A stretch of DNA of 64,000 nt from contig NC_047030.1 in the NCBI RefSeq assembly GCF_902652985.1, positions 13,082,001 to 13,146,000 on the forward strand, in the 5' to 3' direction. Shown here piece by piece: positions 19,211 through 59,592 of this stretch (positions are counted from its first letter, which is position 1; each line of letters opens with the position of its first letter). The notes beneath the pieces were generated by a model. That model was not told the origin of the DNA and did no database searches. It saw only the letters and a list, made by a program, of their open reading frames with translations. A program made the position numbers and the translations under genes. Origin of the DNA: Pecten maximus (taxonomy: Eukaryota).

Positions 19211-19345
19211 AATAGAAGCTCGGAAGGTGGAGCATTTCCTGGAAAGGAATCTACATGGGATAGACGTGTGCCTGGTGGCCTGTATCACAAGACCTTCGGG
19301 ACAACGAAAGGTACACATAAACTTGGCGGAGGCCTACTTCTAAAG
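19211..19345 (+). other. Putative non-coding exon 1 of mucin-like gene A
   Basis: Conserved with 28203-28324 up to and just past a donor (AAG|GTAAGA vs AAG|GTGAGA). Confidence 0.6.
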
Positions 19346-21194
19346 GTAAGAAATAAGACTCATTTTATCTTAGCTTTTATTGTGATTAAAATGATAGTAT
19401 TACTTATACTTGATTTTGTAGTTTACTTCTTTTTGATTCTCATCTATCTCTCAATTTGTTTTGAAAGGTTCAAATAGCTTGTATGTCGTTTGTGAAATCT
19501 TTTGAAGAATTCAAAATGGACTTCGTTTGTTTTGGTGTCACCTGCGTTACTTCGACTCTGGCCTTTTCCCTTTGCACGATACGGATGCTTTTAGGTTTTA
19601 TACTAGACAGTTTTTAACCACATGTTGATCATAGGGCAGACGCTAATGAAAACAATGTATCTAAATATTTTATGTTGGATTTTTCATCATCATACTTATC
19701 AACTTGGAAATAAGGCCTGTAGACGTGGGCACCGCAGCATTAGTAAATCAAGGTTATTGATGACCAGTGATTATTGGGTTAAACTTTAAAATCAAATTAT
19801 ATCTTTATAACAGATAGTCATTTCCATATAGGTGATCATGCTCATTTATATGTTTTATTCTGATTTTGTTGTCAGCGGTAGTTCGGTATTATCAACTTTA
19901 GCATTGCCATCACTGTTTCAAAATGTTTAATAAAACAATAAGCGTGGGTTATTTATGGCTGTATAATCCGGTTTTTGACACAGTGGGTGGGTATATATAA
20001 CAGTGTCACGTGACCACGCTGCCTGCTGACGTCACTGGTTGCTTAGATACAGATTATTGTTTATCTGGCATTAAAACGTGCAAACGAAATTCACAAAGGA
20101 GCATCCTGTTATTTTCATCGATTCCAATGTGTGTTGTAATATTTGTATAACGTCAATTAGGCAGTTGTCTAATGGAGTATTAAGCATTAAACAATCATAT
20201 GTGAACGAAATATAGTAACATTGTCGTTGTGGGCATGGTAAGAGTGTACCATTTCTTGCACACCTCTCACACCTTATACACACATCTCACACACGTGCAT
20301 ACATCATACGTAATAGTATATAATTATTCCTCTTTTGGTTCCCAGCAATAGCCGAGGGGTCATTTAGACGCACTGGGTAAAAAAAGAATTATTTACATTT
20401 ATTTTTATACACTGATGTGGATTCCCTTGGTCAAGCGTCTAGTCCAATGGTCATTTTGATATTACTCGGTCAAGCGTCTAGTCCAATGGTCATTTTGATA
20501 TTAGGAGAGCGTGAATGAGCATCTTGGATTGCCATAAATACATGTGTGCAACTAGAAGTTAAGGTTATTTGGGAGTATGCGGCTTTAAGTATTGGTCATG
20601 TAAATGTCATCTAGCCAAGCTAACCTTTGAAGAATAGATGACCACTTTGACCTTTAAACTTATTGACCTATATTTTGACCTTTTCGTCACTCATTTTTAT
20701 AGGATTTGAGAATAAAATGTATACCAAATTGATAAGAATTAATGAGCTATTTTTGCCTGTGACTTTAAGGACTTATGAGATAATAGGTACATTATGTATA
20801 CATTGATACCATCAGATTTATCAAACATTTTAAACACACTCGAACAATTGTAGATGATACAAAATGTAGTTGTAGATAATACACATATTATATATCATCA
20901 AATGAAGTTTAAGATAATAGGTATATTTTATTTAACTGAATACCGCTGTAGATGGTAAACATATTATTTTCTACGTATAACGCATTAGATGATAGTTATA
21001 TATAATACATGGATACCGGTTATATAGCAATATTATATATACCTAGATAACGCTTATGATATATTTTTCATTTTTGGTCCAGTGTAAAGGAGCTCTATCG
21101 GCATCTGTATTTGAAACATATCAACTCACATATACCCAGATACAGCTTAAGCTGAATGTATCAGTGATCATCTCATACACATTTATGTTTACAG

Positions 21195-23355
21195 ATGAAA
21201 TCTATTCAGCAACCAGCTCTCGATCTACAAACCCTGTTATGTGTTACAGGTGAGTCATTCCATTTTAATTAAGGATTTCTGCTGGCGTTGTCAAGGGTTA
21301 AAGTTCACGATGGTATCGATATTCTGAAGTTCATTAGCTTTGTATTGATACACTGTAAATCATCTTATTTTCGCGTGTGATTAATTTTCGAGTATTTCGC
21401 ACGCGAATAATAGTCCCGCACACTTATCGCCGCGAAAAGGTATGAACCACAGGTACAGTAGGCCTTTTATCAGTATAAATCGCGAAATTGAATTGCCAAG
21501 AAGAGAGAAATAAACTAGCCACGAAAGTAATTGGTTTACGGTATGTATTAGAATTAATTTTGAAAACACACTATCAAGTAATTACTGACTGTAAAGGGGA
21601 TCATATAACGGAGATACGAGGTAATGGATCCAGCGTATATTATATTTATTCAATATTTCTTTATTCATTTTGCCATTCCTACAAAACAAAATATGTGCTC
21701 CTGTACTTATCCCCTTTATCTCACTGTGATACATAGCTTGTATTACTATGTATTCTAAGTAGTTCATAATTGGATTATGCATGATACAAGAGAATTGGAA
21801 ACTTTCGTTTGGCAGATAATTGATCGTCTATTGATTTTTTGTTTTATTTTGAATTACATTGATATATGGTTCTCTTAGTTTCCATATATATAATAAGATA
21901 CAACAATTATATTAAACTTTACACCTCTGTGGAACTTGACAGGAAGTCGCTTAATTCGTGGATCCCTTAAATGGTTTCTGTGTTTAGCATAAGAATAAAT
22001 ATAAATGATGTTTTTGTATTCACAAGCATGATAACGTTTTGTTTCTGGTCAATATTTTTATTTTATGTCAATTAACTTTGAAGAGCTCTATAGCGATTAT
22101 AATTCGCGGAGGTTTTATTTTCGCGTGAATAGGTTCCGAGAACGAAAACGCGAATTATTGATCCTGCGATATACAGTATCACATAACAGATCACTCATTG
22201 CCTAAATGATACTATTTTATTTTCCATATTATTTAACATCTTTTATTATGTAAAATCTTATACTAATAGCATATCATGTTTTCAGTGTTTTACATAGCTC
22301 TGGTACCCGCCATGACTGATGCTAGTACTACCTTTACCGTCTTTTCTTCCATTCCAACTACTGCAACACAAACTACTACCATTTCAACGAGTGCCACTCA
22401 AACTACAGCCGCTACAACGAGTGCCACTCATACTACTGCTACTCCAACAAGTGCCACTCACATCACAGCCACTACTTTGACCCCTACTCCAACGAGTGCC
22501 ACTAAAACTACTGTCACTTCAACGAGTGCCACTCAAACTACAGCCGATACAACGAGTGCCACTCATACTACTGCTACTCCAACAAGTGCCACTCACATCA
22601 CAGCCACTACTTTGACCCCTACTCCAACGAGTGCCACTCAAACTACAGCCGCTATAACGAGTGCCACTCATACTACTGCTACTCCAACAAGTGCCACTCA
22701 CATCACAGCCACTACTTTGACCCCTACTCCAACGAGTGCCACTAAAACTACTGTCACTTCAACGAGTGCCACGCATACTACTGCCACTCCAACAAGTGCC
22801 ACTCACATCACAGCCACTACTTTGACCCCTACTCCAACGAGTGCCACTCAAACTACTGTCACTTCAATCATTGCTACACAAGCTACTGTCACTTCAACGA
22901 GTGCCACGCATACTACTGCCACTCCAACAAGTGCCACTCACATCACAGCCACTACTTTGACCCCTACTCCAACGATTACCACGCAAGCTACTGTCACTTC
23001 AACGAGTGCCACTCATACTACTGCTACTCCAACAAGTGCCACTCACATCACAGCCACTACTTTGACCCCTACTCCAACGATTACCACGCAAACTACTGTC
23101 ACTTCAATCATTGCTACACAAACTACTGTCACTTCAACGATTGCCACGCCAACAACTGCCACTGGAATAACCCCTACTCCAACGACCGTCAGCCCAATAA
23201 CTTCCACGGCAGTCAGTTCCACTATTACGACTCAGACAATTTCAAACTCACTTGGTTCTGGTGCTTCAAAATGTGCAAAAATCAACACAGTCGTCATGTC
23301 CATCATAACTTTTGTGTATACTGTATACAATGGTTTGCAATCTACATACATGTAG
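21195..23355 (+). CDS. Gene A: Thr-rich mucin-like protein, signal peptide + probable GPI anchor, ~374 aa; exons 21195-21249 and 22286-23355 (alternative in-frame acceptor 22298)
   Basis: tttacAG|ATG, 55-nt phase-1 exon with GTGAGT donor; spliced N-terminus MKSIQQPALDLQTLLCVTVFYIALVPAMTDA; TSATHTTATP/TSATHITATTLTPTP repeats; tail GSGASKCAKINTVVMSIITFVYTVYNGLQSTYM. Confidence 0.8.
21353..21541. mobile_element. Tc1/mariner-type MITE (CTGTAAA...TTTACGG ends, internal TTTCGCG motifs)
   Basis: Short TIRs and inverted ttttcgcg/cgcgaaa motifs; related pieces at ~22095-22178 and 51307-51546. Confidence 0.6.
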
Positions 23356-23526
23356 CCTACCACATGGTTACTCTTGGCAACGGCCTGTAAAAATGCATTC
23401 CTAAAATAAAACTTATTACAACTTGAAGATTACGGGGTGTTCTAAAGATGCATTAGAATAAATTGAAAGCTGTGAAGAACCGATATAGATAGCTACCTGT
23501 TTAACAATAATTTACCGGGCTAGTAT

Positions 23527-24271: not shown

Positions 24272-25043
24272 GAATATGTTTTGTATACGATATGTTTTGT
24301 ATACGATAATATGTTGTGTATAAGATGATATGTTTTGTATACGATGATATATTTTGTATACGATAATATGTTTTGTATACGATAATATGTTTTGTATACG
24401 ATAATATGTTTTGTATACGATAATATGTTTTGTATACGATAATATGTTTTGTATACGATAATGTGTTTTGTATACGATAATGAGTTTTGTATACGATACT
24501 ATAATTTGTATACGATAGTATATTTTGTATACGATAAAATGTTTTATACGATAATATATTTTGTATACGATAATATATTTTGTATACGATAATAATATGT
24601 TTTGTATACGCTAATATGTTTTGTACGCTAATATGTTTTGTATACGATAATGTATTTTGTATACGATAATATGTTTTGTTTACGATAATATGTTAGTATA
24701 CGATGATATATTTTGTATACGATAATATATTTTGTATACGATAATATGTTTTGTATACGATAATATATTTTGTATACGATAATATGTTTTGTATACGATA
24801 CTATATTTTGTATATGATAATATATTTTGTATACGATAATGTATTTTGTATACGATAATATATTTTGTATACTATAATATATTTTGTATACGATAATATA
24901 TTTTGTATACGATAATATATTTTGTATACGATAATTTATTTTGTATACTATAATATATTTTGTATACTATTAATATATTTTGTATACGATAATTTATTTT
25001 GTATACTATAATATATTTTGTATACTATAATATATTTCGTATC
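24272..25043 (+). repeat. 19-bp minisatellite, ~40 copies
   Basis: Unit gataatatgttttgtatac drifting to tataatatattttgtatac at the 3' end. Confidence 0.95.
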
Positions 25044-28000: not shown

Positions 28001-28202
28001 CACCTTTCATTAAAGCAGACATTGATATAAATATTATTTGGGAATTGGTGTTATTTAAATGCTTTTATGTCATACTCTCGATATATAATAACATTTAATT
28101 ATCAGTCGGTGGAATCATCACATGTACTTTCAACTTTAGTGGTTTACATATCAAGTTTACACCAAACATGGGCACTGGCAAGTTTTTGACACTATTTAGA
28201 CT

Positions 28203-28324
28203 AATAGAAGCGGCGGAGGTGCAGCATTTCCTGGAAAGAAACCTACATGCGATAGACGTGTGTTTGGTGGCCTAGCGGGACAACGAAAGGTACACATAAA
28301 CTCGGTGGAGGTCTGCTTCTGAAG
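28203..28324 (+). other. Putative non-coding exon 1 of gene B (paralog of A)
   Basis: Homologous to 19211-19345, with donor GTGAGA. Confidence 0.6.
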
Positions 28325-28983
28325 GTGAGAAATAAGACACATTTTATCTTAGCTTTAAGTATGAAATATTTTAAAACATTTTGAGTACTTAAAACGGACC
28401 GTTTTTTGAAAGTACATATGCGTTTAGGTAACATGATTCCGGGGTAAACGCTTATTAGGCCAATGTATTTAAACGTTTTATGATGGATTTGAAAAGTTCT
28501 TCACTATGCTTATTAGGAATAAGTTCACGAAACAGATTACAAAGTTGTAGACGTGTATAAAGGGCACCATGACATAAGTTGTTTGGGATTCATTTGGGAT
28601 AGAGATTATTTGGTTCAAAATTTTCAAATTGTAATCTAATGTAACATCTGTGTAATCTATTTTCATATCGATGAGCATGTTCTTTTTATCCTTTACTCCT
28701 GTTTTGTTTTTGTGATAATTTCGGTAACAGTTGGGATTTAACTTGCCAAATGATTTGTCGTTGATGATAGCCTGGCTGGTTTCATGGCTGAAGAAAATGT
28801 TTAAGATTTTGTTACCCATACATGATCAATTCCTCTTATCATGACAAACATATTACCGTGACGTAAAATGGCACAGAATATGGTTTGAAGGGCGTCTTTT
28901 TCAGCGATTGTGGTTCTGTTCTGCGTCATGGCAGGTATTTATTTACATAAAAACGAAAACTTCATGTCACATATAGATTAATC

Positions 28984-29108: not shown

Positions 29109-30199
29109 ACGTTCGTCACGATGATATGCACGGACCCTGTATCCTTCTTCTTTCCAAAATTTATCGTGAGATATTCTAAAATGATTGGTAAAATTGGTCG
29201 TATTAATCAACCATGCACCTTCCGATCTATATTACCTCCTTTCCCCTCAAAATTACCTGAAAGGAAGTCAACCGACGCTTTCAACGTTTTTATACTCCAG
29301 TTGTCCTTTGCACATAACATACACCTTCAGTAACAAGCTCTGCCCAACTCTCAGTGGTGTACTCGGCGGGAATACCCGAGTGTAGTATGGTATTGTTCAC
29401 AGCTAAACAAAGTCGACGAAAAAGTGGGGATATAATCGATTTAGCCAGGGATTTGTAAAGAGTTAAATAAAGTAGATGCATCTTAATTATCTAGAAATTC
29501 CGCTTTAGATGATAAGTTGATTATAAATATCACTTGTACATTGATGTTTACAGATGAAATATATTGAACAGATGGGTGTCAATGTACACATCATGTTATG
29601 CGTGACAGGTGAGTCATTCCATTTTAATTAGATTTAATAAAATTGTCTTTCTAGTGGTATTATTAAATCTGAATGTTCAATTTGGTATTACTATTTTGAA
29701 TGGAAACATGTTTTGCGTACGTAAGTAAGCTTAAATATCTATATGAATATCTATATAACCGGTTCCTCTCTTGTGTTTAATATATTGACTCCGGAATTTC
29801 AGCGTATTTATTTCGTGGTTCCAAACTGCCGGTGATCTGCTGTTGCTATTGAAAAATATAGTAGCCTTTGAGTTCATACTATCAATTTACCACTGACTGT
29901 ACATACTAAGGGGTTACAACACGATGAAGATATAATGAATCAACTGAACATGCATATTTCATCATCTCATCAGTTATTTTGAGTTATGATTCGCGGACAA
30001 ATTATCTATCCCAATGCAAAGGAAAGTGTGTGTACCTATTCTACTCCGCTTTATTACAACCTGTTACACCCGAGTCATATTTCCTGTGTCATTTTCGATT
30101 AGTATGAAATGAAATAGCTCTAGGTTTAAAGAGGGCTTTCCTTTATTTTTACATGGGGGACTTGGGCGTGGGCAGGATCCTCTTCAGTCCAATGTCGAA

Positions 30200-30540: not shown

Positions 30541-30904
30541 ATCGAGTTCTGCTGCAATAATAGTCTCACCATTTGCTGCCTCTGATGTGTTCCGGTCTAC
30601 GGTACTTACTTCGTTAGGGGTTTCCTTGGCTTGTTGTCTCTGACACTATCAACTTGCCTTGTTCTGTTATCACAGATGTGTTATATGTATAGGTATCTAA
30701 TACATAGGTGTTTAATTTGCAAAAATAATGGAATATGAGTAATGGTGTTTTATTGTAATATCACTTTTTTCTCACAACGTCTCCGTAGGTGTAACATTAC
30801 AGTAAATTTCTTAATTTGTGGACCCCTTAAATGATGTCTTAGTTAAGTATACAAAATAAATGTTCATATGATTTTTATATTCACAAGAAAATGATAACTT
30901 TCTC

Positions 30905-30999
30905 AATTGAGTTGCTCTTGAGACAAATTCAACATGAACTGCTTCGCAGTTCATTAAATTTGTCTCAAGAGCAACTCAATTCATGACCTCATGAATCGA
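30905..30999 (-). mobile_element. Isolated hairpin fragment of the 39937-40484 element
   Basis: Near-identical to the 39937-40095 hairpin core in opposite orientation (loop gcttcgc). Confidence 0.8.
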
Positions 31000-32291
31000 T
31001 TAATCCGTTGATTTCATTTTCAAATATAATCTAATATCTCTTTTTTTATTTTAATATCTTTACAGCGTTGTCCCTAACTATGCTGACCGCCAAAACTGAT
31101 GCAAATTACATTTCTATTACGGAAACTTCAACGATTACCACGCAAGCTTTTACCACTGTCACTACTTCACCGCCAACGACTGCCGTGCAAACGACTTCAG
31201 TTAATCCCAATCCAACGACAGTAACCATGATGACCTCCACTGCTATGATTCCTGCTCTACTACCAATCGAACCGATTCTAGTGCTTCAAAATGTGACGGA
31301 GGATTTGTCGTGAAAAACAGTGTTATGTCCATCATATCTGTACTATATATTGTATACAATTGTTGACAATAACCAATCATAAGGTAATGCTAGACAAGAC
31401 GCCTTTCAGAATGTCTATATAATGTATTCATCATAGGGTTTTCTATTGATGCATCAAAAGGATGTGAAGAACGGATATCGATGCCTAGGTATTTTACCGG
31501 ATTGGTAGATGACGCCCTATTCTCACAAGGATTGTGCTGGCATGGTTAATGGGTGCCGTAATGAATACCGGTCTCTGTTACAATAACATTGTTTTTGTCT
31601 TATAATTCTACATATCTGTTTGAATTTAAATTATTTAATGATAGCGAATATAGCGAAATTAAAATACCTGCATATATTATCAACTTTAGTGCTTGAAATA
31701 GTAAGTATGCTGTAATGTAGAATCATACACAAAACAGAATAGTTGTGTTGTTACCAAACATTTATACAAGTTCATATTTCACCACTTGAGAAACTGGAAG
31801 ATAATTCATTCATGATAACAGCCAGAGTCCCTGTTCATGGTGACAAATAGACAAAGAGATCATGTGGTATGTAACCTTTATAATCCTCCACACTGCCACA
31901 TCTTGTTTATTTATAGCATGTAGGTTACACGAGTGTCCCTATACATTATTTTATCTTGATGTCTAAAGCTATCGCTAAAGCAAAACAACATTTTTGTAAA
32001 TGTTCATGACAAGCAATTGTATTAGTAGTAGGTTAAAACAGTTCGTGTCACGGTTGAGAATGAGAATGTTGGGCATATTTACTCAATCATGTTATAATAA
32101 ACAAACAAACCAAATACCTATTTGATGTATATCTCTTCTTGGGTCCAATTTATTCTTGCATTATTAATATATGAAATATCTTTCACTCGTATGGCAGAAT
32201 TTTGTTTTTATTAAAATAATATCTGTCATACACGTGAAATATAATTGATTGTAAACGGCTAGCTTTTGACTATCCCCTTTACACAACTCCT

Positions 32292-35874: not shown

Positions 35875-36057
35875 TGTGTTTGATAGTATCAGCGGTAGTT
35901 GTGACTCCAGTAGAATGCCCAAGATCAGTGTCAAAATATCGATGAAGTTCCAAACTTCAAAGGCAGTGCCCCGCCATGCAGAGGAGGATTACTCAAAATT
36001 ATGACTTTATGTTAAACCTTATTCAATTGTATTGCTGTCACAGAATGTATGTTATGA
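35875..36057 (+). pseudogene. Pseudogenised terminal exon of a tiny GPI-type cluster member
   Basis: ctattttcAG phase-1 acceptor; VCLIVSAVVVTPVEC, then after skipping one C QDQCQNIDEVPNFKGSAPPCRGGLLKIMTLC*TLFNCIAVTECML*; SAxxCxGG matches the gene B tail; AATAAA at 36108. Confidence 0.5.
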
Positions 36058-38401: not shown

Positions 38402-38450
38402 TATAAACTGGTTAGTCATATCAGTACTCGGAAATTTTCCTGGACAAAAG
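38402..38450 (+). promoter_or_regulatory. Putative TATA box and short non-coding exon 1 of gene C
   Basis: TATAAA 38402-38407, TCAGT at 38421, strong donor AAG|GTGAGT at 38451. Confidence 0.5.
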
Positions 38451-38835: not shown

Positions 38836-41800
38836 ATGAAAATTGCACATCTATTGAAATGGATCACCATCACATTCGTTGCTGCGGGTAAGTCACTTAG
38901 CAAGAATTCTGAATCATGAAAAGCATCAAAATCAATAAAACTACATATGTGTTTATAAACAAACAAACCAGTATTCCCCTTCCGTTAAAACTGATAATAA
39001 AAATGCTATAATTTCCTTATGTTACAAACTGATAAAAACAAACCTGTATTCTCCCTATTCACCTTTATTACAATGTATATCACAATAACCGAAACTACCT
39101 TATTTGAAGTATGTATACTTTTTGACCTAAGTACTATACGTTATGATAATGTGTAGAGATAGCTTGTGCAGGGTTTTTTTTATATAAAAATAATTTGCTA
39201 TTTTTTTTTTTTTTTTTTGCAATAACATTTTAACAACCATGTATGAACTTAATCAAGCTCTCAAACAAATCAAGTAACGCTAATTTACAGTTTTAATTAA
39301 TAATGTTGTACTGGTTTTAGAGCTTTTTCTAATTCGATAGTAAGAATTTAGGAAAAATAAATGAATAAAAGATAAAAAAAGATATGATATAATTGCCGTC
39401 ATTATTTGCCTGCTTTTCCTTTGGTATCATTACAATTTTAAAGTTAAAGATTATATTCCGCGTACATGAAACACAAATGATTACATTCATCACAATATAT
39501 TTGTTATACATGTATAAAATTGTATCTGCAAGTTTTAAAATCATTCGCTTCCACATTTGTAAAGTTTTACTTAATTTCAGCTTCAGCAATGACATTCTAT
39601 ACTGGCTAGGCTACCCCTCAACTGAACTGTTGGTATCTATATAATTGATTTCTATATCAAACGCTGACAGTGATTATATAAAAACCCCTTGGGTATACAA
39701 CCAGAAGCAATTTGTATGTTTAATATTTTTTATTTAGATATACCACTCCGACACGTGTTTAACAATAACACTGGGTACCGGGTAGAACAGTTGATTATGA
39801 TTTTATACAAGATATGATATAAAATATCTCTATATTGTTGAGGATTAATACACAATGTCATGGACCTGCTACAGCGTTAACGAGGTATATATCTCATGGT
39901 GCATATCATTAATGGAAATGGCTTTATATAAACATTTAAGGATTGAATCTTGATTTGGTCGATTTCATTGGGTCATGAATTGAGTTGCTCTTGAGACAAA
40001 TTTAATGAACTGCGAAGCAGTTCATGTTGAATTTGTCTCAAGAGCAACTCAATTCATGACCCCATGAAATCGACCAAATCAAGATTCAATCCTTATATTT
40101 CAATTGTTTTTTTTTCGAAGTCTCGAAACATGTGCAAGTCCAAATGCGGAAAAGCCCGAGGAGTTCCGGATTGTGCATGTCTAGTTGGTCGAGTAAAATA
40201 GTCTGCAATTTTAGGATTAAAAACAGCATTATTTTGTCAAAATAAAAGTATTTAGCATATCTGGTCTTTCATAAAATACAAGAATACATTATAAATTTGA
40301 TAATTTTAATAATTATTCCATGTTTATAACAACAATGTAGAAAAAGTGAAATCGTCCCGCAGACGGTATTTAACCATGTATTCATACGCACTGATCAGTG
40401 TTAATCTGGTCAAATTCATAAGCAAATGGAACAGATTAAGTTTGGTAGTTTCATTGAGTCCAACTTGAGTAGAAATTGAAATATCAAAAAATAAAAGTAT
40501 TGAAAAGGGATATTACTATGTGGGGCTGAGTCTTTAGTATTCCATTTTTAATCGCGTTGTATCGCAATTTGAGATAACTGTTGAGCATACGTCCTCTCTG
40601 ACAAATCTGACAAATGAGGGGTAAGCATCCTTGTTGTGTGACGATCAACCAATTGTTGCTCACCTTTACAATAACAACACATTCAGTACCCTTGTAATAA
40701 TGGAAATGTATTGATATCTTAATCAGGATAGTCCAGGACACACAAAAATATCGGCGTGAACGTTTGGATATACATCACGCCGTTGCCATCACCAAGATGT
40801 ATTTTAATCATTCGATTAGCTATGAAGCGTTTGATATTATACAGTTAAAGTATATGGTTGAGGGATATAGCAAGTTTCTGGTGTCCCGAGACCATGTCTA
40901 TTTCCAGAGGCGAAGGAACTATATCACCCAACCCCATACTTTAACCGTTTTATTATACCGATACAAACAGGAGAAATTATTTTAGCAGATTAAAAAAAAA
41001 CATAAGCTGTGAAACAAACTTCCATGTGATTTTCCCAGACACCATTTTGATACACTGTGCAAAGGGGCCAAGTGATATGTTTTTTTCCCATTCAAGTAGG
41101 GAACATGATTTCAAATATTTCCCATAACAAAACTTAATTTTCATTGAGGTTGCCATCAGCTGCTACATGGGATATACCACCTAAAATTCAGCGTTAAATT
41201 TTCTTAACAGCTGATCACATTCGGCAGACTGACAGCTTTCAATCTCCTCAATTGTTTTGTCCCTTGTCTCCAAATAATGCACCAACACTGCCACAGAGCC
41301 CTTCACTGATTTCCTAGTGCTTTTAGAATCTTCTTCAAGTATGCAGCGCCATTTCAGTTGACCGGTCGTCTGCAAGTAGGCGGCGCGTTCAGTAGCAAGC
41401 TCCGCCCACTTGGCTACGCTTGTAGCTAACGTCATCTTCGGAAACAAGATCTGCCCACCTCGCGTCTGATTGGCTCGGCGGAAATACCCGAAGTTGCAGG
41501 TGTGTGTTAGCTCAGGGGTGCGCTAGTTCTGTTCTCAAGACTAACGCACAGGACTAGCGCACAGCAAAGCAAGGTTAAACAAATAGGAGGGAAGTAGTCT
41601 ATTTAACCAGTTTTATATAGAGTAAATAAAGTAGAGATATGATAATAGAGTAAAACTTATTCAGTAAGGCAATTAATCATTCACATATAGTACTGCATAG
41701 CGTTACGTCAGTGTCTAAAAAACAAATATCTCTAACGTCATCCGAGGACTTAAATTTGAAATATCCCGTATAATAAAACATTGACAGTGTTTTTGTAAGA

Positions 41801-44800
41801 ATGCTCTCCCTTTAGATTTAAATTTCCATCTACAAGTCACTCAAATATATACAGTATAATAAAACATTCACAGTGCTTGTGTAAGAATGCTCTCCCTTTA
41901 GATTTAAATTTCCATCTACAAGTCACTCAAATATCTCCAGTATAATAATACATTCACAGTGCTTGTGTAAGAATTGTCTCCCTTAGATTTAAACTTCAAC
42001 TATAATAGCCACTCATGATCACGTTTACATTTCAACGGCGGCATGGTTACATTTGTAAATCGCTCCAACTAGTTATCCAATACCTGACGGTTAGCAGGGA
42101 TTCCATAGTTTTTGAAGATATACGCGATGCAGCATGCATCATTTACACTCTACGGTTCAGAATATACACACATTACATGTCATTCTGAAGAATGTATTAG
42201 TGATTAAATTATAGGTCTGTTGCATCTCCCCATATACATTTTGACATGTTTAGTTTCCTTTTACCGCATTCCAGATACCAACACTTTAAGCCGCTCTCAA
42301 CATCACTGGCGAGGTTTAGAGGAGCGAAAAAATGTTTGATGTAGTTTAATTCATTTGTATTGAAAAAGACTAACACTATATGTGTCTTTTGTACAATCCT
42401 TGAAATCATCCACATATTTCCTGACAAAACTCATAAAAAATCTAAGATCAGGATTTATTTTTTATTTGTACAGAATTCAAAGGATTCTAGAAATGGTAGA
42501 TGAATGAATAGGATGTTTAGATATGAGTTTAATAAGAAAGGCAGTCTGATCATAAAAATGTATTTTTGTGTCATACATTTGTTTCGTTATTTTTAATATC
42601 AAGAGGCCTGGTAGGCCTATATCGGTTATCAACAGGTTGTGGAACCACTGAAAATGCATATAAACACATTTGGTAGCTATTCATCTCAACGTGCTAATGA
42701 CCTTATAACGTGGGGCCTCCGAGTTATCGGGAAGCCGATGGAAGATTTTAACATTTGAACAAAAACAAAACAAACAAAAAACCAAAACAAATAAACTAAC
42801 AAAAATAAGTAAATAAATAACGATGAAAAATGAATAGATATAAATAATGAATCAAACGAAAAAAAATGAAAAAAAGGTGAATATAAAAAATAGGAAAATA
42901 ACATAATGAATAAAATAAGTAGCTTGAAGAAATGTTTAATTATATATAACAGGGGATGTGCAATATCCCTTTAATTCAACGAAACTTAATAAAATGTTGT
43001 ACTTTTATTGCAGTACCACATAACCTGGTCAGTGCCTATGATTATGGTTATGATTATCATGAGGACAATGATATATACAGCTTTGATCCTGGATTTGACC
43101 CTGACTTAGACCCTGGATTTGAAACAGCTCAATCTGACGCCACCATTGGAATGGAGACGGTGGCAAATGATGGCCGCAGACGAAAACCAGGAGCTGGACG
43201 AGGCAAAAAAACCAGCGTTAGATTCACAGGAATTGGGCCTGTGGTGACATCTGAACATTCTTTAGAAGGGACAATGGAAACTCTGTCGTTGGTAAATACA
43301 AGACATGGAAACAGCGTAACGACTGAGACCTGGGGTGTAACAAGCATGCCCACAACAGCGACTTTAATGTTCCGACCCACGGACATACTTGATGTTATTA
43401 GCACAGCCCCGTATGCAGATTCAACGAAAAGCGTGAATTTCAATGTATGGGAAGTACTTACATCCAATTACCAGACGACAGCGATATCATCTGATTTATT
43501 GTCACGTGATTATTTCAGTGTCATTCAATCCAATATACATCCCACGAAAACACTGGTTTCCTCCTTGGGAGAATTTCGAGCCGGAGATTATGGCATTGAG
43601 AGTGGAACTGATATTGTTGCGGCAACAGCACAAATCATATCAAATCTCGAGATAATACGCGGACAAGGAACGAGTGGTTACCAAACACCAGGTGAATTTG
43701 ATTTCCATATTCACAGTTCGATAGACGAAGTTGAGTTGTATGACTTTGATTCAGTGAGTGTGGGGGACATTTATTATGACTATGTAACAACAGACTGGGT
43801 AGGAAATTCCGGACATGCAACAATGGATGGGTTTGGTTCAAATGATTATGTCACAATGAATGTTTTGGGTTCATTCGACTACGGGTCTTTATATGGCTTT
43901 GGCACTAACGCAATTGTAACAAAGAGTGGATTTGGCTCAATCGATTATGCAACACTTCACGGATTTGGCACTGATGAATATATCACGATGGGTGAATTTG
44001 ATTCATATGATTATGGCACAATAAGCGGCTTAGGTTCAAACAGCTTTGGAACATTGGAAGAATTTGACGCTTACGAGCATACAATGATGAGTGGATACGG
44101 TTTGCACGACTTTTGGACTTCCGAATCTTTTGGCGCTTATGAAAAACCAACAAGGAGTGGAATTGAGCTTTACGATAATGGGACATTTGGAGTATTAGGC
44201 AGTGATGAATATGCAACAAATGATGGATTCAATTCTTATGGCATGAGTGAGGGAGCCGAGTGGTATGATTATGCTACGGTTGATGATTTACGCAATAATG
44301 AACATGCAAGCAAGAGTGGATTTGATTTGTATGACTATGGAACAGTAAGTGGGTTTGGCGATAATAGACACACAACAAAGGGTGCGTTCGATTCGTATGA
44401 CTATGGAACAGCAGGTGGGTTTGGCAATATGGGACACGCAACAAAGGTTCCGTTCGATGTATATGACTATGGAACAGCAGGTGGGTTTGGCAATAATAGA
44501 CACGCAACAAAGGGTGCGTTCGATTCGTATGACTATGGAACAGCAGGTGGATTTGGCAAAAATAGACACGCAACAAAGGGTGCGTTCGATTCGTATGACT
44601 ATGGAACAGCAGGTGGGTTTGGCAATATGGGACACGCAACAAAGGTTCCGTTCGATTCGTATGACTATGGAACAGCAGGTGGGTTTGGCAATAATAGACA
44701 CGCAACAAAGGGTGCGTTCGATTCGTATAACTATGGAACAAGGGATGGGTTTGGCAATAATAGACACGCAACAAAGGGTGCGTTCGATTCGTATAACTAT

Positions 44801-45202
44801 GGAACAAGGGATGGGTTTGGCAATGATGGACACGCAACGAAGGGTCCATATAGTGATTATGGCACCTTTGGAGGCATCGACAATAGCAAACATAGAACAA
44901 AAGATGAAATTGATCTGTACGACTATGATACATTAGATAGGACAATAGGTTTTCGACAGTTGTCAGAGGGAAAGCCAAATCTACATCCAACGGCATCCCG
45001 CTTATCGGGTGCAAACTACAGGATGTCAAAAAGTGTTGACCCCACTTATAACACTGACGATTCTGACGAATACAACAAGAAGAATGGTGGTGAACAATTC
45101 TTTGAAGGAAGCACTGGGTGCCCCTCCATGATACCAGACGCACATACACAAACACTTTCCTTAGCGCTATGTGTGTTTTTCTCTTGTAAACTCAGTCACT
45201 AA
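38836..45202 (+). CDS. Gene C: secreted, probably GPI-anchored Gly/Tyr/Asp-rich repeat protein, ~746 aa; exons 38836-38887 and 43014-45202
   Basis: ttccAG|ATG 52-nt phase-1 exon joins the long ORF in frame, giving MKIAHLLKWITITFVAAVPHNLVSA|YDYGY; 22-aa repeats GAFDSYDYGTAGGFGNNRHATK; tail GSTGCPSMIPDAHTQTLSLALCVFFSCKLSH. Confidence 0.85.
39937..40484. mobile_element. Non-autonomous palindromic element, Crypton-like architecture
   Basis: 159-bp hairpin 39937-40095 with GCGAAGC loop (40012-40018); atatttcaatt (40095) pairs with terminal aattgaaatat (40474-40484). Confidence 0.7.
40695..40834 (-). repeat. 140-bp inverted repeat, right copy
   Basis: Exact reverse complement of 37151-37290. Confidence 0.95.
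40853..41779 (-). mobile_element. Crypton-like element remnant with an N-terminal tyrosine-recombinase-like fragment (~41181-41345)
   Basis: Decayed hairpin tatggttgagggatatag...ctatatcacccaaccccata; gttttattatac (40947) pairs with gtataataaaac (41768); peptide SKSTRKSVKGSVAVLVHYLETRDKTIEEIE...CDQLLRKFNAEF resembles the region preceding DUF3504 in Crypton/ZMYM/KCTD1-like proteins. Confidence 0.55.
41760..42015 (+). repeat. 86-bp tandem repeat x3 overlapping the element terminus
   Basis: gtataataaaacattcacagtgcttgtgtaagaatgctctccc... at 41768, 41854, 41940. Confidence 0.9.
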
Positions 45203-49510: not shown

Positions 49511-50740
49511 TTGAATGGATGAAAATTGTAAATGGAGTAAACATATCGAAAATATAGGTAAAAGCGTTGCAAAACAGATAAGTGTACTTCGTAAATTAAA
49601 ATATGTATTAAACAAGCAAACTTTATTAAAGATTTACCAAGCTTATTGTCTACCACTATTTGAATATTGTTGTGAAGTTTGGGATGGTTGTTCTCTCAGT
49701 GATGCAGACAAACTCGAAAAGCTACAGTAAGAAGCTGCCAGAATTATAACTGGGTTACCATCGTATGCCAGCAGAGAATCCCTCTATTCAGAAAGTGGAT
49801 TGGAACCATTGTGTAACAGACGCTCGAGAAGAAAAATTCAATTATTTTATAAAATTAAAAATCACCTAGTTCCAAAGTACTTATCGTCACTATTACCTCC
49901 TCCTGTTTCAGAAAACTCTCAATACAATCTGCGCGATTCACACAACTTTTCTCTCCCAAACTTCCGTTTACAATTAACTAACTCCTCTTTCTTTCCATCC
50001 CCCATTCGACAGTGGAACCAACTTGATCTTGAAATCAGAAATAGTGTGTCTTATCCATCCTTTAAAAAATCTCTCACAAACAGTTCTGTGGTTCCAAATT
50101 ATTATTCTTTCGGTGATAGACAATTAAATATATTGCATGCTAGACTAAGAAACAAATCCAGCACACTTAACAATGACCTGTATAGAGTAAATTTGATTAA
50201 TTACCGTCAGTGCCAATGTGGACATCCAATTGAAGATGCATATCACTTTTTCTTTGCTTGTAATAATTATGTGAACCAGAGAATAGCATTGTTTCGTGAT
50301 CTGAATGACTATATTCCACTAGATCTGCAGTTACTTTTACACGGAAGAAATGATTTATTGCAAGATGAAAATTTAAGAATTTGTCAAGTCACTCAGATAT
50401 ACATCGCTAACTCAAATAGATTCTGATTTCTCTCCTACACCCATTTTAGATTTATATTTCATGTATATATTTACATATGGTATGTTATGTTTTTATGTAT
50501 GTATACATAAGTATGTGTGTATATATATATTATCAATTGATTATACTTATTCTTTTGCGTTGCCGACAACAAAAGAGAAACGGATATTCAAGGAAGTAAG
50601 GAGTGAAAGGAGAACGGAACATTGGCATGGGAAGTGATGAACAGTAGTACCAGCAAAGCGCTTTGTGTATACTTCTGTTGTCGGCACTGGTGAAGATTAG
50701 CTCTTATCTAAATTGCTTGGGTGGATATATATAGATATGT

Positions 50741-50834
<94 letters not shown>

Positions 50835-53133: not shown

Positions 53134-56100
53134 ATGCGCCATATTGTTTCGTAACCACATGTGATATCGCCATATTGTTTGCCGTCACCATATGTGATCG
53201 GCGTCATATTGTTTCCCAGCACCACATGTGATATCACTATATTGTTTCCCGTCACCACATATGATATCGTCATATTGTTTCCCGTCACCACATGTGATAT
53301 CCGTCATATTGTTTCCCTGTCACCACATGTGATATCGTCATATTGTTTCCCTGTCACCTCATATGATATCGCCATATTGTTTCCCGTCACCTCATATGAT
53401 ATCCGTCATATTGTTTCCCGGAACCACATATGATATCGTCCTATTGTTTCCCGGCACCACATATGATATCGTCCTATTGTTTCCCATCACCACATATGAT
53501 ATCGTCATATTGTTTCCCGTCAACACATGTAATATCGCCATATTGTTTGCCGTCACCATATGTGATATCGCCATATTGTTTGCCGTCACCATATGTGATC
53601 GGCGTCATATTGTTTCCCGGCACCAAATGTGATATCGCCATATTGTTTCCCTGTCACCTCATATGATATCGCCATATTGTTTCCCGTCACCTCATATGAT
53701 ATCCGTCATATTGTTTCCCGGCACCACATATGATATCGTCATATTGTTTCCCGGCACCACATATGATATCGTCCTATTGTTTCCCTGTCACCACATGTGA
53801 TATCCGTCATATAGTTTCCCATCACCACATATGATATCGTCATATTGTTTCCCGTCACCACATATGATATCGCCATATTGTTTGCCGTCACCATATGTGA
53901 TATCGCCATATTGTTTGCCGTCACCATATGTGATATCGCCATATTGTTTGCCGTCACCATATGTGATCGGCGTCATATTGTTTCCCGGCACCACATGTGA
54001 TATCGCCATATTGTTTCCCTGTCACCACATGTAATATCGCCATATTGTTTTCCGTCACCATATGTGATATCGCCATATTGTTTCCCTGTCACCATATGTG
54101 ATCGGCGTCATATTGTTTTCCGTCACCACATGTGATATCGCCATATTGTTTCCCTGTCACCACATGTGATATCGCCATATTGTTTCCCGTCACCACATGT
54201 GATATCGCCATATTGTTTCCCGTCACCACATGTGATCGGTGTCATATTGTTTCCCGGCACCACATGTGATATCGCCATATTGTTTCCCTGTCACCTCATA
54301 TGATATCGCCATATTGTTTCCCGTCACCACATGTGATATCGCCATATTGTTTCCCGTCACCACATGTGATATCACCATATTGTTTGCCGTCACCATATGT
54401 GATCGGCGTCATATTGTTTCCCGGCACCACATGTGATATCGCCATATTGTTTCCCTGTCACCTCATATGATATCGCCATATTGTTTCCCGTCACCTCATA
54501 TGATATCCGTCATATTGTTTCCCGGCACCACATATGATATCGTCCTATTGTTTCCCGGCACCACATATGATATCGTCCTATTGTTTCCCTGTCACCACAT
54601 GTGATATCCGTCATATAGTTTCCCATCACCACATATGCTATCGTCATATTGTTTCCCGTCACCACATATGATATCGCCATATTGTTTGCCGTCACCATAT
54701 GTGATATCGCCATATTGTTTGCCATCACCATATGTGATATCGCCATATTGTTTGCCGTCACCATATGTGATCGGCGTCATATTGTTTCCCGGCACCACAT
54801 GTGATATCGCCATATTGTTTCCCTGTCACCACATGTAATATCGCCATATTGTTTGCCGTCACCATATGTGATATCGCCATATTGTTTCCCTGTCACCACA
54901 TGTGATATCGTAATATTGTTTCCCGTCACCACATGTGATATCGCCATATTGTTTCCCTGTCACCACATGTGATATCGCCATATTGTTTCCCGTCACCACA
55001 TGTGATATCGCCATATTGTTTCCCGTCATCACATGTGATATCGCCATATTGTTTCTCGTCACCACATGTGATATCGTCATATTGTTTCCCGTCACCTCAT
55101 ATGATATCCGTCATATTGTTTCCCTGTCACCACATATGATATCGCCATATTGTTTCCCGTCACCACATATGATATCGTCATATTGTTTCCCTGTCACCAC
55201 ATGTGATATCGCCATATTGTTTCCCGTCACCACATATGATATCGCCATATTGTTTCCCGGCACCACATATGATATCGTCATATTGTTTCCCGGCACCACA
55301 TGTGATATCGCCATATTGTTTCCCTGTCACCTCATATGATATCGCCATATTGTTTCCCGTCACCTCATATGATATCCGCCATATTGTTTCCCGGCACCAC
55401 ATATGATATCGTCCTATTGTTTCCCGGCACCACATATGATATCGTCCTATTGTTTCCCTGTCACCACATGTGATATCCGTCATATAGTTTCCCATCACCA
55501 CATATGATATCGTCATATTGTTTCCCGTCACCACATATGATATCGCCATATTGTTTCCCGGCACCATATGTGATATCGCCATATTGTTTGCCGTCACCAT
55601 ATGTGATATCGCCATATTGTTTGCCGTCACCATATGTGATCGGCGTCATATTGTTTCCCGGCACCACATGTGATATCGCCATATTGTTTGCCGTCACCAT
55701 ATGTGATATCGCCATATTGTTTGCCGTCACCATATGTGATATCGCCATATTGTTTGCCGTCACCATATGTGATATCGCCATATTATTTGCCGTCACCATA
55801 TGTGATATCGCCATATTGTTTGCCGTCACCATATGTGATCGGCGTCATATTGTTTCCCGGCACCACATGTGATATCGCCATATTGTTTCCCTGTCACCAA
55901 GGGGCCGCGGTGGCCGAGTGGTTAAGGTGTCCCGACACTTTAACACTAGCCCTCCACCTCTGAGTTGCGAGTTCGAAACCTACGTGGGGCAGTTGCCAGG
56001 TACTGACCGTTGGCCGGTGGTTTTTCTCCGGGTACTCCGGCTTTCCTCCACTTCCAAAACCTGGCACGTCCTTAAATGACCCTGGCTGTTAATAGGACGT

Positions 56101-57947: not shown

Positions 57948-58598
57948 ACCCTTCCGATACCAAGGCCTAATAGACATACGTTTATTTCACAACTTTCTAT
58001 AACATCACAGTATGATACATTCAGCTTTGTAAATATTTTCTGATGTATACATCCCTACGTTATATCGTCCAACCAAAGGCCTATAACATATACCTGTATA
58101 CATGTACATGTACATGTTTGTCGAAGCACTAGACTAGAGCATTAAGAAGCAGTCGTGCTTTTGCTGCTCGGTATTTTCAATATAATTTTTCAATATTTTA
58201 TGTCTTACTATCGCTGCGGTTTCCACGAAAGTGTGATGAATTTTGTTTGATTTTAGAGATACATTTGGCAGTCTTTTACACCACGTTTATTTCCTAAGGA
58301 GACAACCCTTCAAAAACAATTAGTCTTATTGAACTTGTACTTAATCAATTATCTCCCTTCCTTTTGCTCTACGTTTCCCAATATATTTTCATGTCGGTTG
58401 TCTTGTTGTTCAGCTGAACAAAATTATATGTAGAACAGAACATGATCAAGAAAAAAAACAAAACATTATTACCTGATAATTTTATTTCCCTTATGAAAAC
58501 TGGCTACATATATACATACTTTTTTTCTTCAAATATTCAGAATTCAGAATTCAGAACAGGAAGTTTACCCAATGATGATATCATACTTGTTTTGATAT

Positions 58599-58705
58599 CA
58601 CGTGACCTTCTAAAATATTGACCCGGCATGTACATTATAAAGGGCCCGTAAACCTGCACTTGGCGTTGTTGGATACATCAGCAGGACAATTTCCACTTAA
58701 ACAAG
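58599..58705 (+). promoter_or_regulatory. Putative promoter (E-box, TATA) and non-coding exon 1 of gene D
   Basis: CACGTG 58599, TATAAAG 58636, donor AAG|GTAATA at 58706; same layout as gene C. Confidence 0.55.
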
Positions 58706-59537
58706 GTAATATCAGTATATTTAACTATCGTCCAGGATGATACCTTCTCATAGTATTTACATTGTTTTATATAATACAAAGTATCACTATATATTATTAG
58801 TGACTATAATATTCATTACAATATTTTGTGAATTAAGTTTCTGTTGTTTTCTGAGCTCTGCGTTTATTATTTTGAAAATTACTTTTTTATTTAACAAAAT
58901 GATATGGAAGTGACATATTGTATGGTTGAAGACAAATACAATGAGATTTTATCTATAAACGTTATCAATTACTGAATCAGCCGTAATCAGACATTGTCGT
59001 GTCAATTCTTTCTTGTAAATATGTTTAGCGCTGAAAAGTTATGACTTTATTTCTTGCTGATCAGTTTAAAATAGTGATAGTTGAGTATGGTTTACTTGAG
59101 GCAATCAGATATTATACACTATTTTTGAATGTAAAACGCACAGAAAACATAATTCGCATATTAAGCATCAAAACTTAGGTCCTTAACATCACTATAAGGA
59201 GTCTTAGAAGGACGAATCAGTGGTATGACGCAGTTTAATTCTTAACTCTACTGTATTGAGAAGTCCGCTTCTAATTATCAATTGGTGTAGAAATGTGTTA
59301 ATATATTGTGTGTCTTTTGAGTAATCATTTAAAGTCCTCTATACTCCCCATCAGAATTCATAATATTTCCAAAATATTAGCTAAAATAACAATTCGACTT
59401 GAAATAAGTGATAGATAATTTTTAGTTTATTTAAAAAAATTCTGTCCGCAAAACAATGTATTTATAACTTCCTTATAACAACAAAGGCATCAATCCATCT
59501 GTAATGTAATCACTTGTTTCCTTTCGTGGATTTCCAG

Positions 59538-59592
59538 ATGCAGCTTCCGGTATATTACATATCACTTGTAGTTCTGACAATCGTCCTGTACG
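59538..59592 (+). CDS. Gene D signal-peptide exon (partial gene; next exon unresolved)
   Basis: atttccAG|ATG, 55 nt, phase 1, GTAAGT donor; encodes MQLPVYYISLVVLTIVLY; same size and phase as genes A-C. Confidence 0.7.

What the first reader, a model, noticed from the sequence alone, without database searches (positions are those of the whole stretch)
19211..59592. Same-strand cluster of modular GPI-type surface-protein genes with one exon plan but unrelated ectodomains
Seen: four loci have a signal exon whose ATG is the first three bases after the acceptor (21195, 29554, 38836, 59538), is 52-55 nt long and ends in phase 1, each preceded by a candidate non-coding exon. The terminal exons found (22286, 31066, 35875, 43014) finish the signal peptide and end in small residues + Cys + a hydrophobic tail (SGASKC, SSASKC, GSAPPC, GSTGC). 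The middles are unrelated: ~300 aa of Thr repeats, ~55 aa Thr-rich, ~15 aa, and ~690 aa Gly/Tyr/Asp-rich. Known: small residues followed by a C-terminal hydrophobic stretch is the GPI signal. Inference: a fast-evolving family in which a fixed secretion/anchor scaffold is filled by local repeat expansion (mucus, shell, byssus or gamete surface). ORF-only annotation would miss it.
Basis: partly seen in the sequence, partly recalled or inferred. Interest (0 to 1): 0.8.

Follow-up and report, generated by a model that had tools for sequence, protein, structure and literature searches.

The report
Scallop cluster of orphan secreted-protein genes
A 45-kb stretch of king scallop chromosome 16 carries several apparently unannotated, same-strand candidate genes for secreted, repeat-rich proteins built on one three-exon plan, but two of the five claimed members are broken, the membrane-anchor idea is untested, and no RNA evidence of use was found.

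Summary
The genome is Pecten maximus (its size and scaffold count match the published assembly exactly).

**What holds up**
- The four "signal exons" are real sequence features. Each has ATG as its first three bases after a YAG acceptor, is 52-55 nt long, is open, and ends in phase 1 at a GTRAG donor.
- About 0.05 such sites are expected per strand. Four are seen, all on the + strand, and none in 80 kb of flanks.
- A and D have intact in-phase terminal exons.
- I found E's predicted terminal exon just outside the window. It is in phase, Thr-rich, and has AATAAA 25 nt after the stop.

**What does not**
- B is a true paralogue of A, but a 13-nt deletion puts its SSASKC tail out of frame.
- C is closed in all frames, has no signal exon, and its tail is not hydrophobic. 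It is a decayed relic at best.
- Only A and B are detectably homologous.

**Still open**
- A GPI anchor is plausible by inspection for A and D, weak for E, and not tested with a predictor.
- A and D have no Pfam family, no homologue, and no database protein covering these exons in the length range searched, although the database holds this genome's annotated neighbour gene.
- RNA contigs from four runs show no use of D's junctions.

**Verdict:** a real, lineage-restricted cluster of secreted low-complexity genes. The single-family reading is only partly supported, and interest is moderate.

The parts
19211..19345 (+). Locus A, candidate 5' non-coding exon (donor GT at 19346)
   Evidence: 82% identical to the B block 28200-28356, against 60-66% or no alignment in the introns. 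Read directly. No RNA evidence.
21195..21249 (+). Locus A signal exon: 55 nt, ATG first, phase 1, peptide MKSIQQPALDLQTLLCVT
   Evidence: Paralogue of B's exon (82%).
22286..23355 (+). Locus A terminal exon. It finishes the signal peptide (FYIALVPAMTDA...). About 300 aa are Thr-rich tandem repeats. It ends ...GSGASKC + AKINTVVMSIITFVYTVYNGLQSTYM, then stop. AATAAA at 23405.
   Evidence: Open only in this frame. Thr 42%, a single Cys. Tandem units of 105/135/240 nt. Tail hydropathy 2.25 over 12 aa. Poly(A) signal.
28203..28324 (+). Locus B, candidate 5' non-coding exon
   Evidence: Homologous to A's exon 1. This block has only these two copies in the whole genome.
29554..29608 (+). Locus B signal exon: 55 nt, phase 1, peptide MKYIEQMGVNVHIMLCVT
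31066..31366 (+). Locus B terminal exon, frameshifted. The phase-1 frame gives an 81-aa Thr-rich piece that stops at 31311-31313. The A-like tail (SSASKC... from 31277, stop at about 31366) is in another frame.
   Evidence: The alignment with A shows a 13-nt deletion before the tail. No AATAAA within 290 nt.
35875..36015 (+). Locus C: an acceptor-like site followed by short open stretches. Possibly a decayed remnant of an A/B-type tail. Not an intact exon.
   Evidence: All frames are closed. GSAPPC is in a frame with upstream stops. Similarity to A's tail is weak (z about 3). No signal exon.
38402..38450 (+). Locus D: TATAAA (38402) and a candidate short 5' non-coding exon ending at the donor 38451
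   Evidence: No RNA contig lies here.
38836..38887 (+). Locus D signal exon: 52 nt, phase 1, peptide MKIAHLLKWITITFVAA
   Evidence: No RNA contig lies here in X1-X4.
43014..45202 (+). Locus D terminal exon, 728 codons. It starts PHNLVSA|YDY... Next come about 240 aa of acidic non-repeat sequence, then about 400 aa of Gly/Asp/Tyr-rich 11/22-aa repeats. It ends ...EGSTGC + PSMIPDAHTQTLSLALCVFFSCKLSH. AATAAA at 45525.
   Evidence: One 162-nt contig of run X1 at 43808-43969, depth 3.6. No Pfam, PDB or homologue hits.
58636..58705 (+). Locus E: TATAAA (58636) and a candidate 5' non-coding exon ending at the donor 58706
   Evidence: Untested by RNA.
59538..59592 (+). Locus E signal exon: 55 nt, phase 1, peptide MQLPVYYISLVVLTIVLY. 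Its terminal exon lies outside the window, at window-equivalent 64600 or 64618 to 64840 (L011:600/618-840).
59575..60282 (+). 73-bp tandem array of 9.7 copies. It repeats the 3' half of E's signal exon plus its donor and the start of the intron.
   Evidence: read

Best explanation
This is a lineage-restricted, apparently unannotated cluster of candidate three-exon genes for secreted low-complexity proteins. It lies on Pecten maximus chromosome-scale scaffold C16, at about 13.101-13.147 Mb.

The shared plan is: a short 5' non-coding exon (candidate only); a 52-55-nt exon that begins with the ATG and encodes the first 17-18 residues of the signal peptide; a phase-1 intron; and one terminal exon with everything else.

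- A is intact. It has a signal peptide, about 300 aa of Thr-rich (mucin-type, presumably O-glycosylated) tandem repeats, small residues plus its only Cys, and then a 26-aa uncharged, partly hydrophobic tail.
- B is an old tandem paralogue of A. A 13-nt deletion disconnects its tail, so it is a pseudogene or a truncated, non-anchored form.
- C is at most a decayed fragment.
- D is an intact orphan. It has a signal peptide, an acidic 240-aa region, about 400 aa of Gly/Asp/Tyr repeats, and a similar Cys-plus-26-aa tail.
- E encodes a product of roughly 92-98 aa, Thr-rich, with a weaker tail.

The likely mechanism is inferred, not shown. The signal peptide directs ER import. The Thr-rich parts are O-glycosylated. 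For A and D, the GPI transamidase may cut at the small-residue site near the Cys and attach a GPI anchor.

The cluster most likely grew by tandem duplication of a small secreted-protein gene. Sequence then turned over rapidly and repeats expanded, while the exon plan was kept. This is shown for A and B and inferred for D and E.
For:
- **Signal exons:** 4 observed against 0.05 expected, all on one strand and none in the flanks.
- **A-B homology:** concentrated in exon 1 (82%), the signal exon (82%) and the tail (81%), and low in the introns.
- **Open terminal exons:** those of A and D are long and open in the phase-1 frame. D's includes about 260 non-repeat codons.
- **E's terminal exon:** found where the model predicts. 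Both candidate acceptors are in frame, the sequence is Thr-rich, and AATAAA lies 25 nt after the stop.
- **Poly(A) signal after A:** at 50 nt.
- **Cysteine position:** the Cys sits 23-29 residues from the C-terminus in A, B (tail frame), D and E. It is A's only Cys, and all three of D's Cys lie in the last 27 residues.
- **Tail hydropathy over 12 aa:** A 2.25, B 2.34, D 2.14.
- **No known family or homologue for A or D**. The same database returns the RefSeq P. maximus protein at 100% identity for the neighbouring transporter exon, plus other scallops' orthologues.
Against: - **No transcript evidence.** Contigs of four presumed RNA runs cover none of D's candidate exon 1, signal exon or acceptor. 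Only one 162-nt, depth-3.6 contig lies in D's terminal exon. 22 of 23 listed runs of the species held almost none of D's words.
- **No annotated protein.** No database protein covers A or D within the length range searched.
- **No homology beyond A-B.** D and E show no sequence similarity to A or B.
- **The phase-1 intron is generic.** Phase-1 introns after signal peptides are a general feature of secreted-protein genes (PMC1626468).
- **D's repeats show no purifying selection.** Pairwise differences by codon position are 93/72/66, with 21 synonymous against 102 non-synonymous single-change codons.
- **The tails are imperfect GPI signals.** Their hydrophobic stretches are short (12-15 aa). A and D end in polar residues, and E's tail carries E, D and R.
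- **No dedicated predictor.** No GPI or signal-peptide predictor could be run.
- **No fold for D.** Its N-terminal region gave none (pLDDT 29.7, single sequence).
Confidence: 0.5

Rival explanations
1. These are unrelated neighbours. A and B are one small mucin-like gene pair. D and E are independent secreted-protein genes that happen to lie nearby on the same strand. The common exon plan is the generic architecture of secreted-protein genes, with a separate signal-peptide exon and a phase-1 intron. It is not shared ancestry, and the Cys-plus-tail resemblance is coincidental.
For: No significant DNA similarity links D or E with A or B in exon 1, the signal exon or the 3' end. [quoted passage not shown] The tail motif alone is not specific: 4 spurious matches turned up in 288 kb of strand sequence. 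E's tail is not hydrophobic.
Against: Three independent loci share unusually exact details: ATG as the very first bases of the exon, exon lengths of 52/55/55 nt, a single terminal exon, and a Cys 23-29 residues from the end after small residues. They sit within 45 kb on one strand, with no such exon in the 80 kb of flanks. A, B and E all have Thr-rich ectodomains.
Confidence: 0.3
2. These are largely non-functional sequence: dying or never-expressed gene relics and repeat-generated open frames. Only the splice-like signals and ORFs remain, and nothing is made from them today.
For: B is frameshifted and C is closed in all frames. No RNA contig covers D's 5' exons and only a trace lies in exon 3. 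No database protein covers A or D in the length range searched. Satellites in this same window make chance ORFs of 470-517 aa. D's repeats show no excess of synonymous change.
Against: A's 355-codon exon is open in only one of six frames despite being repetitive. D has about 260 open non-repeat codons plus 90 at the C-terminus in a 36% GC genome. Intact acceptors, donors, phases, start codons and poly(A) signals co-occur at A, D and E. The runs laid were few and were contigs, which show presence, not absence.
Confidence: 0.15
3. The proteins are real and secreted, but the C-terminal tails are not GPI signals. They could be short C-terminal membrane anchors, or propeptides or hydrophobic ends of soluble matrix or mucus proteins. 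The conserved Cys would then serve disulfide cross-linking or lipidation.
For: The hydrophobic cores are only 12-15 aa. They are followed by 4-9 polar residues in A (NGLQSTYM) and D (KLSH). E's tail contains E, D, R and H. The Cys is A's only Cys, as would suit intermolecular cross-linking.
Against: The layout fits the textbook GPI signal for A and D: small residues, a short polar spacer, an uncharged hydrophobic end, and a total of about 28-31 residues (own knowledge of GPI signals). 12-16 hydrophobic residues are too few for a normal transmembrane helix.
Confidence: 0.3

Closest known systems
GPI-anchored mucin-type surface glycoproteins: Trypanosoma cruzi mucins (Thr-rich, heavily O-glycosylated, GPI-anchored; PMC3515882), and the small vertebrate CD24/CD52 type (own knowledge)
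   Same: A, and in short form B and E, have a signal peptide, a Thr-rich low-complexity ectodomain, small residues and a C-terminal tail. The centre between the two ends varies greatly in length and sequence.
   Different: There is no sequence relationship. GPI attachment is not shown here. E's tail is poor and B's is out of frame. D's ectodomain is Gly/Asp/Tyr-rich, not mucin-like. The organism is a bivalve, where I found no described family of this type.
Vertebrate SCPP (secretory calcium-binding phosphoprotein) gene cluster (own knowledge, not checked in a paper here)
   Same: It is a tandem cluster of fast-evolving secreted low-complexity protein genes. They are recognised mainly by a conserved exon plan (non-coding exon 1, signal peptide in exon 2) rather than by sequence similarity.
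   Different: SCPP introns are phase 0 and the genes have many small exons. Here there is a single phase-1 intron in the coding part and one terminal exon. There are no SXE phosphorylation motifs and no evidence of a role in mineralisation.
Rapidly evolving molluscan secretome and shell-matrix proteins with repetitive low-complexity domains (PMC4897951)
   Same: They are lineage-restricted, signal-peptide-bearing proteins dominated by expanding repeats. They have no homologues outside close relatives and arise by tandem duplication.
   Different: The runs laid gave no contigs on D's 5' exons and only a trace on exon 3. Two of those runs may be the mantle samples of the genome paper, but that is an inference. 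A C-terminal hydrophobic tail is not typical of shell-matrix proteins.
General rule: phase-1 introns cluster at signal-peptide cleavage regions (PMC1626468)
   Same: All four loci split the signal peptide with a phase-1 intron near its end.
   Different: The rule does not predict an ATG exactly at the exon's first base, the near-constant 52-55-nt exon length, or the clustering on one strand.

Membership tests
GPI-anchored protein (C-terminal GPI attachment signal) | N-terminal ER signal peptide | tested here: inconclusive
   By inspection only. The exon-2 peptides have hydrophobic cores, with a maximum 9-aa hydropathy of 1.6-3.1. Exon 3 begins with a continuation and small residues at -3/-1: A ...PAMTDA, B ...AKTDA, D ...NLVSA, E ...SES or CLA. 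SignalP was not available, and the joined models were not submitted to any tool.
GPI-anchored protein (C-terminal GPI attachment signal) | Small residues at the omega and omega+2 positions, 20-31 residues from the C-terminus | tested here: met
   A has GSGAS-K-C, B (tail frame) SSAS-K-C, D GSTG-C and E DNG-C. These lie 23-29 residues before the stop, counted from the Cys.
GPI-anchored protein (C-terminal GPI attachment signal) | Polar spacer followed by an uncharged hydrophobic C-terminal stretch | tested here: inconclusive
   Best 12-aa mean Kyte-Doolittle hydropathy: A 2.25, B (tail frame) 2.34, D 2.14, E 1.42, C 1.07. A's last 24 residues are uncharged. D ends in KLSH. E's tail has E, D and R. 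B's tail is not in the reading frame. No NetGPI, PredGPI or big-PI run was possible.
GPI-anchored protein (C-terminal GPI attachment signal) | Release by PI-PLC, or a detected GPI moiety | not testable with these tools
   This needs an experiment.
Mucin-type (PTS-domain) glycoprotein | Long Pro/Thr/Ser-rich tandem-repeat domain in a secreted protein | tested here: met
   This holds for A only: Thr 42%, Ser 11%, Pro 7%, with tandem units of 105/135/240 nt over 22349-23185. B (27% Thr, 81 aa) and E (22% Thr, 78 aa) are short Thr-rich stretches. D is not mucin-like.
One gene family by descent (A, B, C, D, E) | Detectable sequence homology between members | tested here: not met
   A-B similarity is strong (z = 57, 26 and 13 for exon 1, the signal exon and the 3' end). 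C against A is marginal (z about 3). All pairs involving D or E are at background in exon 1, the signal exon and the 3' end. The one exception is a poly-T-like D-E acceptor alignment.
One gene family by descent (A, B, C, D, E) | Shared gene architecture: ATG-first 52-55-nt signal exon, phase 1, single terminal exon | tested here: met
   Met for A, B, D and E. Not met for C, which has no signal exon and no open frame.
Molluscan shell-matrix / mantle secretome RLCD proteins | Expression in mantle, or presence in the shell proteome | tested here: inconclusive
   Only D was laid. There are no contigs on its 5' exons, and one low-depth 162-nt contig in exon 3 in run X1. The tissue of the coded runs is not known to me. 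Shell proteomes were not searched by sequence.

The most novel reading that the evidence does not exclude
This is a bivalve gene cluster in which a fixed 'secretion plus anchor' chassis is conserved while the whole ectodomain is replaced by locally born repeats. The chassis is an ATG-first 52-55-nt phase-1 signal exon plus a terminal small-residue/Cys/26-29-aa tail. The repeats are Thr mucin units in A, B and E and Gly/Asp/Tyr 22-mers in D. It would be an invertebrate counterpart of architecture-defined families such as SCPP. It would produce GPI-anchored surface glycoproteins that annotation pipelines and homology searches both miss.
Probability: 0.25. Interest if true: 0.6.

Novelty: new member of a known kind. 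Interest (0 to 1): 0.4.

Why it matters
If expressed, these would be scallop-specific surface or secreted glycoproteins that appear to be missing from the gene set searched. They would add a clear example of how molluscan secreted-protein genes are born and die in tandem: one intact gene, one frameshifted paralogue and one relic lie side by side. They would also show that a conserved exon plan can reveal kinship where sequence cannot. The practical value is modest: better annotation of orphan secreted genes in bivalve genomes, and candidates for mucus, gamete or larval surface proteins. Without expression data it remains a well-formed hypothesis rather than a discovery.

Tried and rejected
- **Family and homology searches.** Pfam on the terminal exons of A, B and D gave nothing. 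The word-indexed search of 5.8 billion proteins gave nothing for D or A. phmmer of D against 1.84 billion representatives gave only low-complexity GFG-repeat matches to unrelated proteins. The PDB sequence search found none.
- **Structure.** An AlphaFold single-sequence model of D's N-terminal 260 aa had pLDDT 29.7 and was unusable, so no fold search was run.
- **Own-genome searches.** D matched only satellite-encoded chance frames. A's exon 1 exists only at A and B.
- **RNA.** Only one coded run held 9% of D's words. Laying four runs on 38350-44349 showed no junctions.
- **Shared promoter motif.** The A/B motif ATTTCCTGGAAAG occurs exactly only at A and B. D has only a 3-mismatch match, and that is not significant evidence.
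- **Tools unavailable.** The ESM Atlas could not take new sequences.
- **Joined models.** Exons were handled one by one.
- **Rejected idea.** I considered that the 143-nt inverted repeats around D's 5' exons mark a multicopy transposon. They are unique to this locus.

Full report
**Identity of the sequence.** The window is G000:C16:13082001-13146000 of a genome of 918,306,378 bases in 3,983 contigs. Those are exactly the figures published for the Pecten maximus assembly (PMC7191990). A control search returned the RefSeq protein 'probable transporter MCH1 [Pecten maximus]' at 100% identity for the exon at 10266-11282. The window is king scallop DNA with 28-44% GC and many satellites.

**The signal exons.** All four are as described.

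| Locus | Coordinates | Length | Peptide |
|---|---|---|---|
| A | 21195-21249 | 55 nt | MKSIQQPALDLQTLLCVT |
| B | 29554-29608 | 55 nt | MKYIEQMGVNVHIMLCVT |
| D | 38836-38887 | 52 nt | MKIAHLLKWITITFVAA |
| E | 59538-59592 | 55 nt | MQLPVYYISLVVLTIVLY |

- Each starts with ATG right after a pyrimidine-rich cag acceptor and ends with one extra G before GTGAGT or GTAAGT.
- A loose scan (AG|ATG, 40-70 nt open, GTRAG) finds 6 sites on the + strand and 1 on the - strand.
- The stricter pattern occurs 4 times on +, 0 on -, and 0 in 80 kb of flanks that I fetched. 300 Markov simulations gave a mean of 0.05.
- A and B share descent, so there are three independent occurrences. Even allowing for post-hoc parameters, this is not chance.

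**The terminal exons.**
- A (22286-23355) and D (43014-45202) are open in the phase-1 frame and end as quoted.
- B is different. Its phase-1 frame reads a Thr-rich 81 aa and stops at 31311-31313 (...NVTEDLS). SSASKC and the A-like tail sit in another frame. Aligned to A, B has a 13-nt deletion just before the tail. B also lacks an AATAAA within 290 nt.
- C (35875) stops after 2, 22 or 42 codons in the three frames. GSAPPC lies in a frame that has stops directly after the acceptor. Its 11-aa end is not hydrophobic, and no signal exon precedes it.
- So two of the four quoted tails depend on unnoticed frame slips.

I fetched the sequence beyond the window.
- An open frame lies at window-equivalent 64443-64838.
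- Two strong acceptors precede its coding part, with the exon starting at 64600 or 64618. Both are in the frame required by a phase-1 donor.
- It encodes AIIFSES/GCLASS, then a Thr-rich stretch, then ...TDNGC plus 29 residues and a stop. AATAAA follows 25 nt later.
- The 5-kb intron is mostly tandem repeat. It begins with a 73-bp array that copies the 3' half of the signal exon and its donor.
- This fulfilled prediction is the best support for the exon plan.

**Relatedness.**
- A and B are clear tandem paralogues. Exon 1 is 82% identical, the signal exon 82%, the tail 81% and one intron block 76%. Much of the rest of the introns does not align, or aligns at about 60-66%.
- The exon-1 block exists only at these two places in the genome.
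- No pair involving D or E rises above shuffled controls in exon 1, the signal exon or the 3' end. A D-E acceptor alignment (z = 4.2) looks compositional.
- C's end resembles the A/B tail only marginally (z about 3).
- What D and E share with A and B is architecture: the exon plan, plus a Cys preceded by small residues 23-29 residues before the stop. That Cys is A's only Cys, and all three of D's Cys lie in the last 27 residues.
- The tail motif alone gives four spurious matches in the 144-kb region, so it carries weight only together with the signal exons.

**What the proteins look like.**
- A is 42% Thr with 105/135/240-nt tandem units, a typical mucin-type domain.
- D has an acidic 240-aa non-repeat part and about 400 aa of Gly/Asp/Tyr-rich 11/22-aa repeats, with pI 4.6.
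- Differences between D's repeat units fall evenly on the three codon positions (93/72/66). Single-change codons are 21 synonymous against 102 non-synonymous, so the repeats show no purifying selection.
- D has no Pfam family, no homologue in two very large protein searches beyond low-complexity matches, no PDB relative and no confident fold.
- A also has no family or homologue.
- The database does hold the P. maximus RefSeq protein of the neighbouring gene, plus orthologues from other scallops. The blanks therefore mean that no database protein covers these exons within 0.55-1.75 times the query length, and that no homologue is annotated in other bivalves.

**The GPI question.** No predictor was available.
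- By inspection, A, B (tail frame) and D have small residues, a polar spacer, and a 12-15-aa hydrophobic stretch with mean hydropathy 2.1-2.3 over 12 aa.
- E scores 1.4 and has charged residues. C scores 1.1.
- A GPI anchor is plausible for A and D, doubtful for E, and not applicable to B as assembled or to C.

**Expression.**
- Only one of 23 coded runs of the species held any of D's exon-3 words, at 9%.
- I laid four runs on 38350-44349. All are stored as contigs, and their RNA status is a guess on record. They cover the intronic repeat at 39934-40484 heavily and leave unique intron DNA almost bare, which is RNA-like behaviour.
- They place nothing on D's candidate exon 1, signal exon or acceptor. 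One 162-nt, depth-3.6 contig lies at 43808-43969.
- No junction is supported or contradicted. Contigs cannot prove absence.

**Comparison with what is known.**
- A phase-1 intron near the signal-peptide cleavage site is a general feature of secreted-protein genes (PMC1626468). That part of the plan is not diagnostic.
- Thr-rich GPI mucins with variable centres are known from trypanosomes (PMC3515882) and, in small form, from vertebrates (own knowledge).
- Fast-evolving repeat-rich secreted proteins are well known in molluscs (PMC4897951).
- Families defined by exon plan rather than sequence have a precedent in the vertebrate SCPP cluster (own knowledge).
- I found no paper describing such a cluster in bivalves. 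That search was shallow.

**Verdict.**
The signal exons, A, D and the extension to E are real. The B and C tails were misread.
A real cluster of lineage-restricted secreted-protein gene candidates shares one architecture.
- Common descent is shown only for A and B. GPI anchoring is unverified, and expression has not been demonstrated.

Noticed in passing
window 37148-37290 and 40695-40837: A pair of 143-nt inverted repeats, 99% complementary and unique in the whole genome. They bracket D's TATA box, candidate exon 1, signal exon and 1.9 kb of intron. Recombination between them would flip D's promoter and signal exon relative to its terminal exon. This is the subject of another note (s1-793545).
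   Followed up: partly
window 59575-60282: A 73-bp tandem array of 9.7 copies at 89% identity. Each unit repeats the last ~24 nt of E's signal exon, its GTAAGT donor and the intron start. Each unit also has a ...cccctag acceptor, so a 24-nt in-frame hydrophobic 'micro-exon' (VVLTIVLC) could in principle be included. This is the subject of another note (s1-793482).
   Followed up: partly
window 10266-11285, and window-equivalent -1714 to -665 (L016): The large exon of an MFS transporter annotated 'probable transporter MCH1' (100% to RefSeq P. maximus, 83% to Mizuhopecten). A near-identical second exon lies about 12 kb upstream, so this is a tandem duplicate pair just upstream of the cluster.
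   Followed up: partly
window 39934-40484 (related piece at 30905-30999): An interspersed repeat in D's intron with an internal 72-nt palindrome (39934-40005 / 40027-40098). It is represented at word depths of hundreds to thousands in all four runs laid. An 89% identical piece lies in B's intron 2.
   Followed up: no
window 19234-19246 and 28226-28238: ATTTCCTGGAAAG, which contains the palindrome TTCCTGGAA (a STAT/GAS-type TTCN3GAA site, own knowledge), is conserved exactly in the candidate exon 1 / promoter block of A and B.
   Followed up: partly
window 21929-22039 and 30789-30901: A 110-nt block in intron 2 of A and B is conserved at 76%, better than the rest of the introns. It could be a regulatory element or an unrecognised exon.
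   Followed up: no
window 989-4416, 13994-15522, 24273-25042, 53137-55899, 60410-63801: Five large satellite arrays with units of 44, 28, 19, 33 and 8/23-58 nt. Several create chance ORFs of 100-517 aa on both strands.
   Followed up: no
window 49800-50426: A 208-aa ORF resembling the C-terminal end of a retroelement protein (my impression only). It has no Pfam match.
   Followed up: partly
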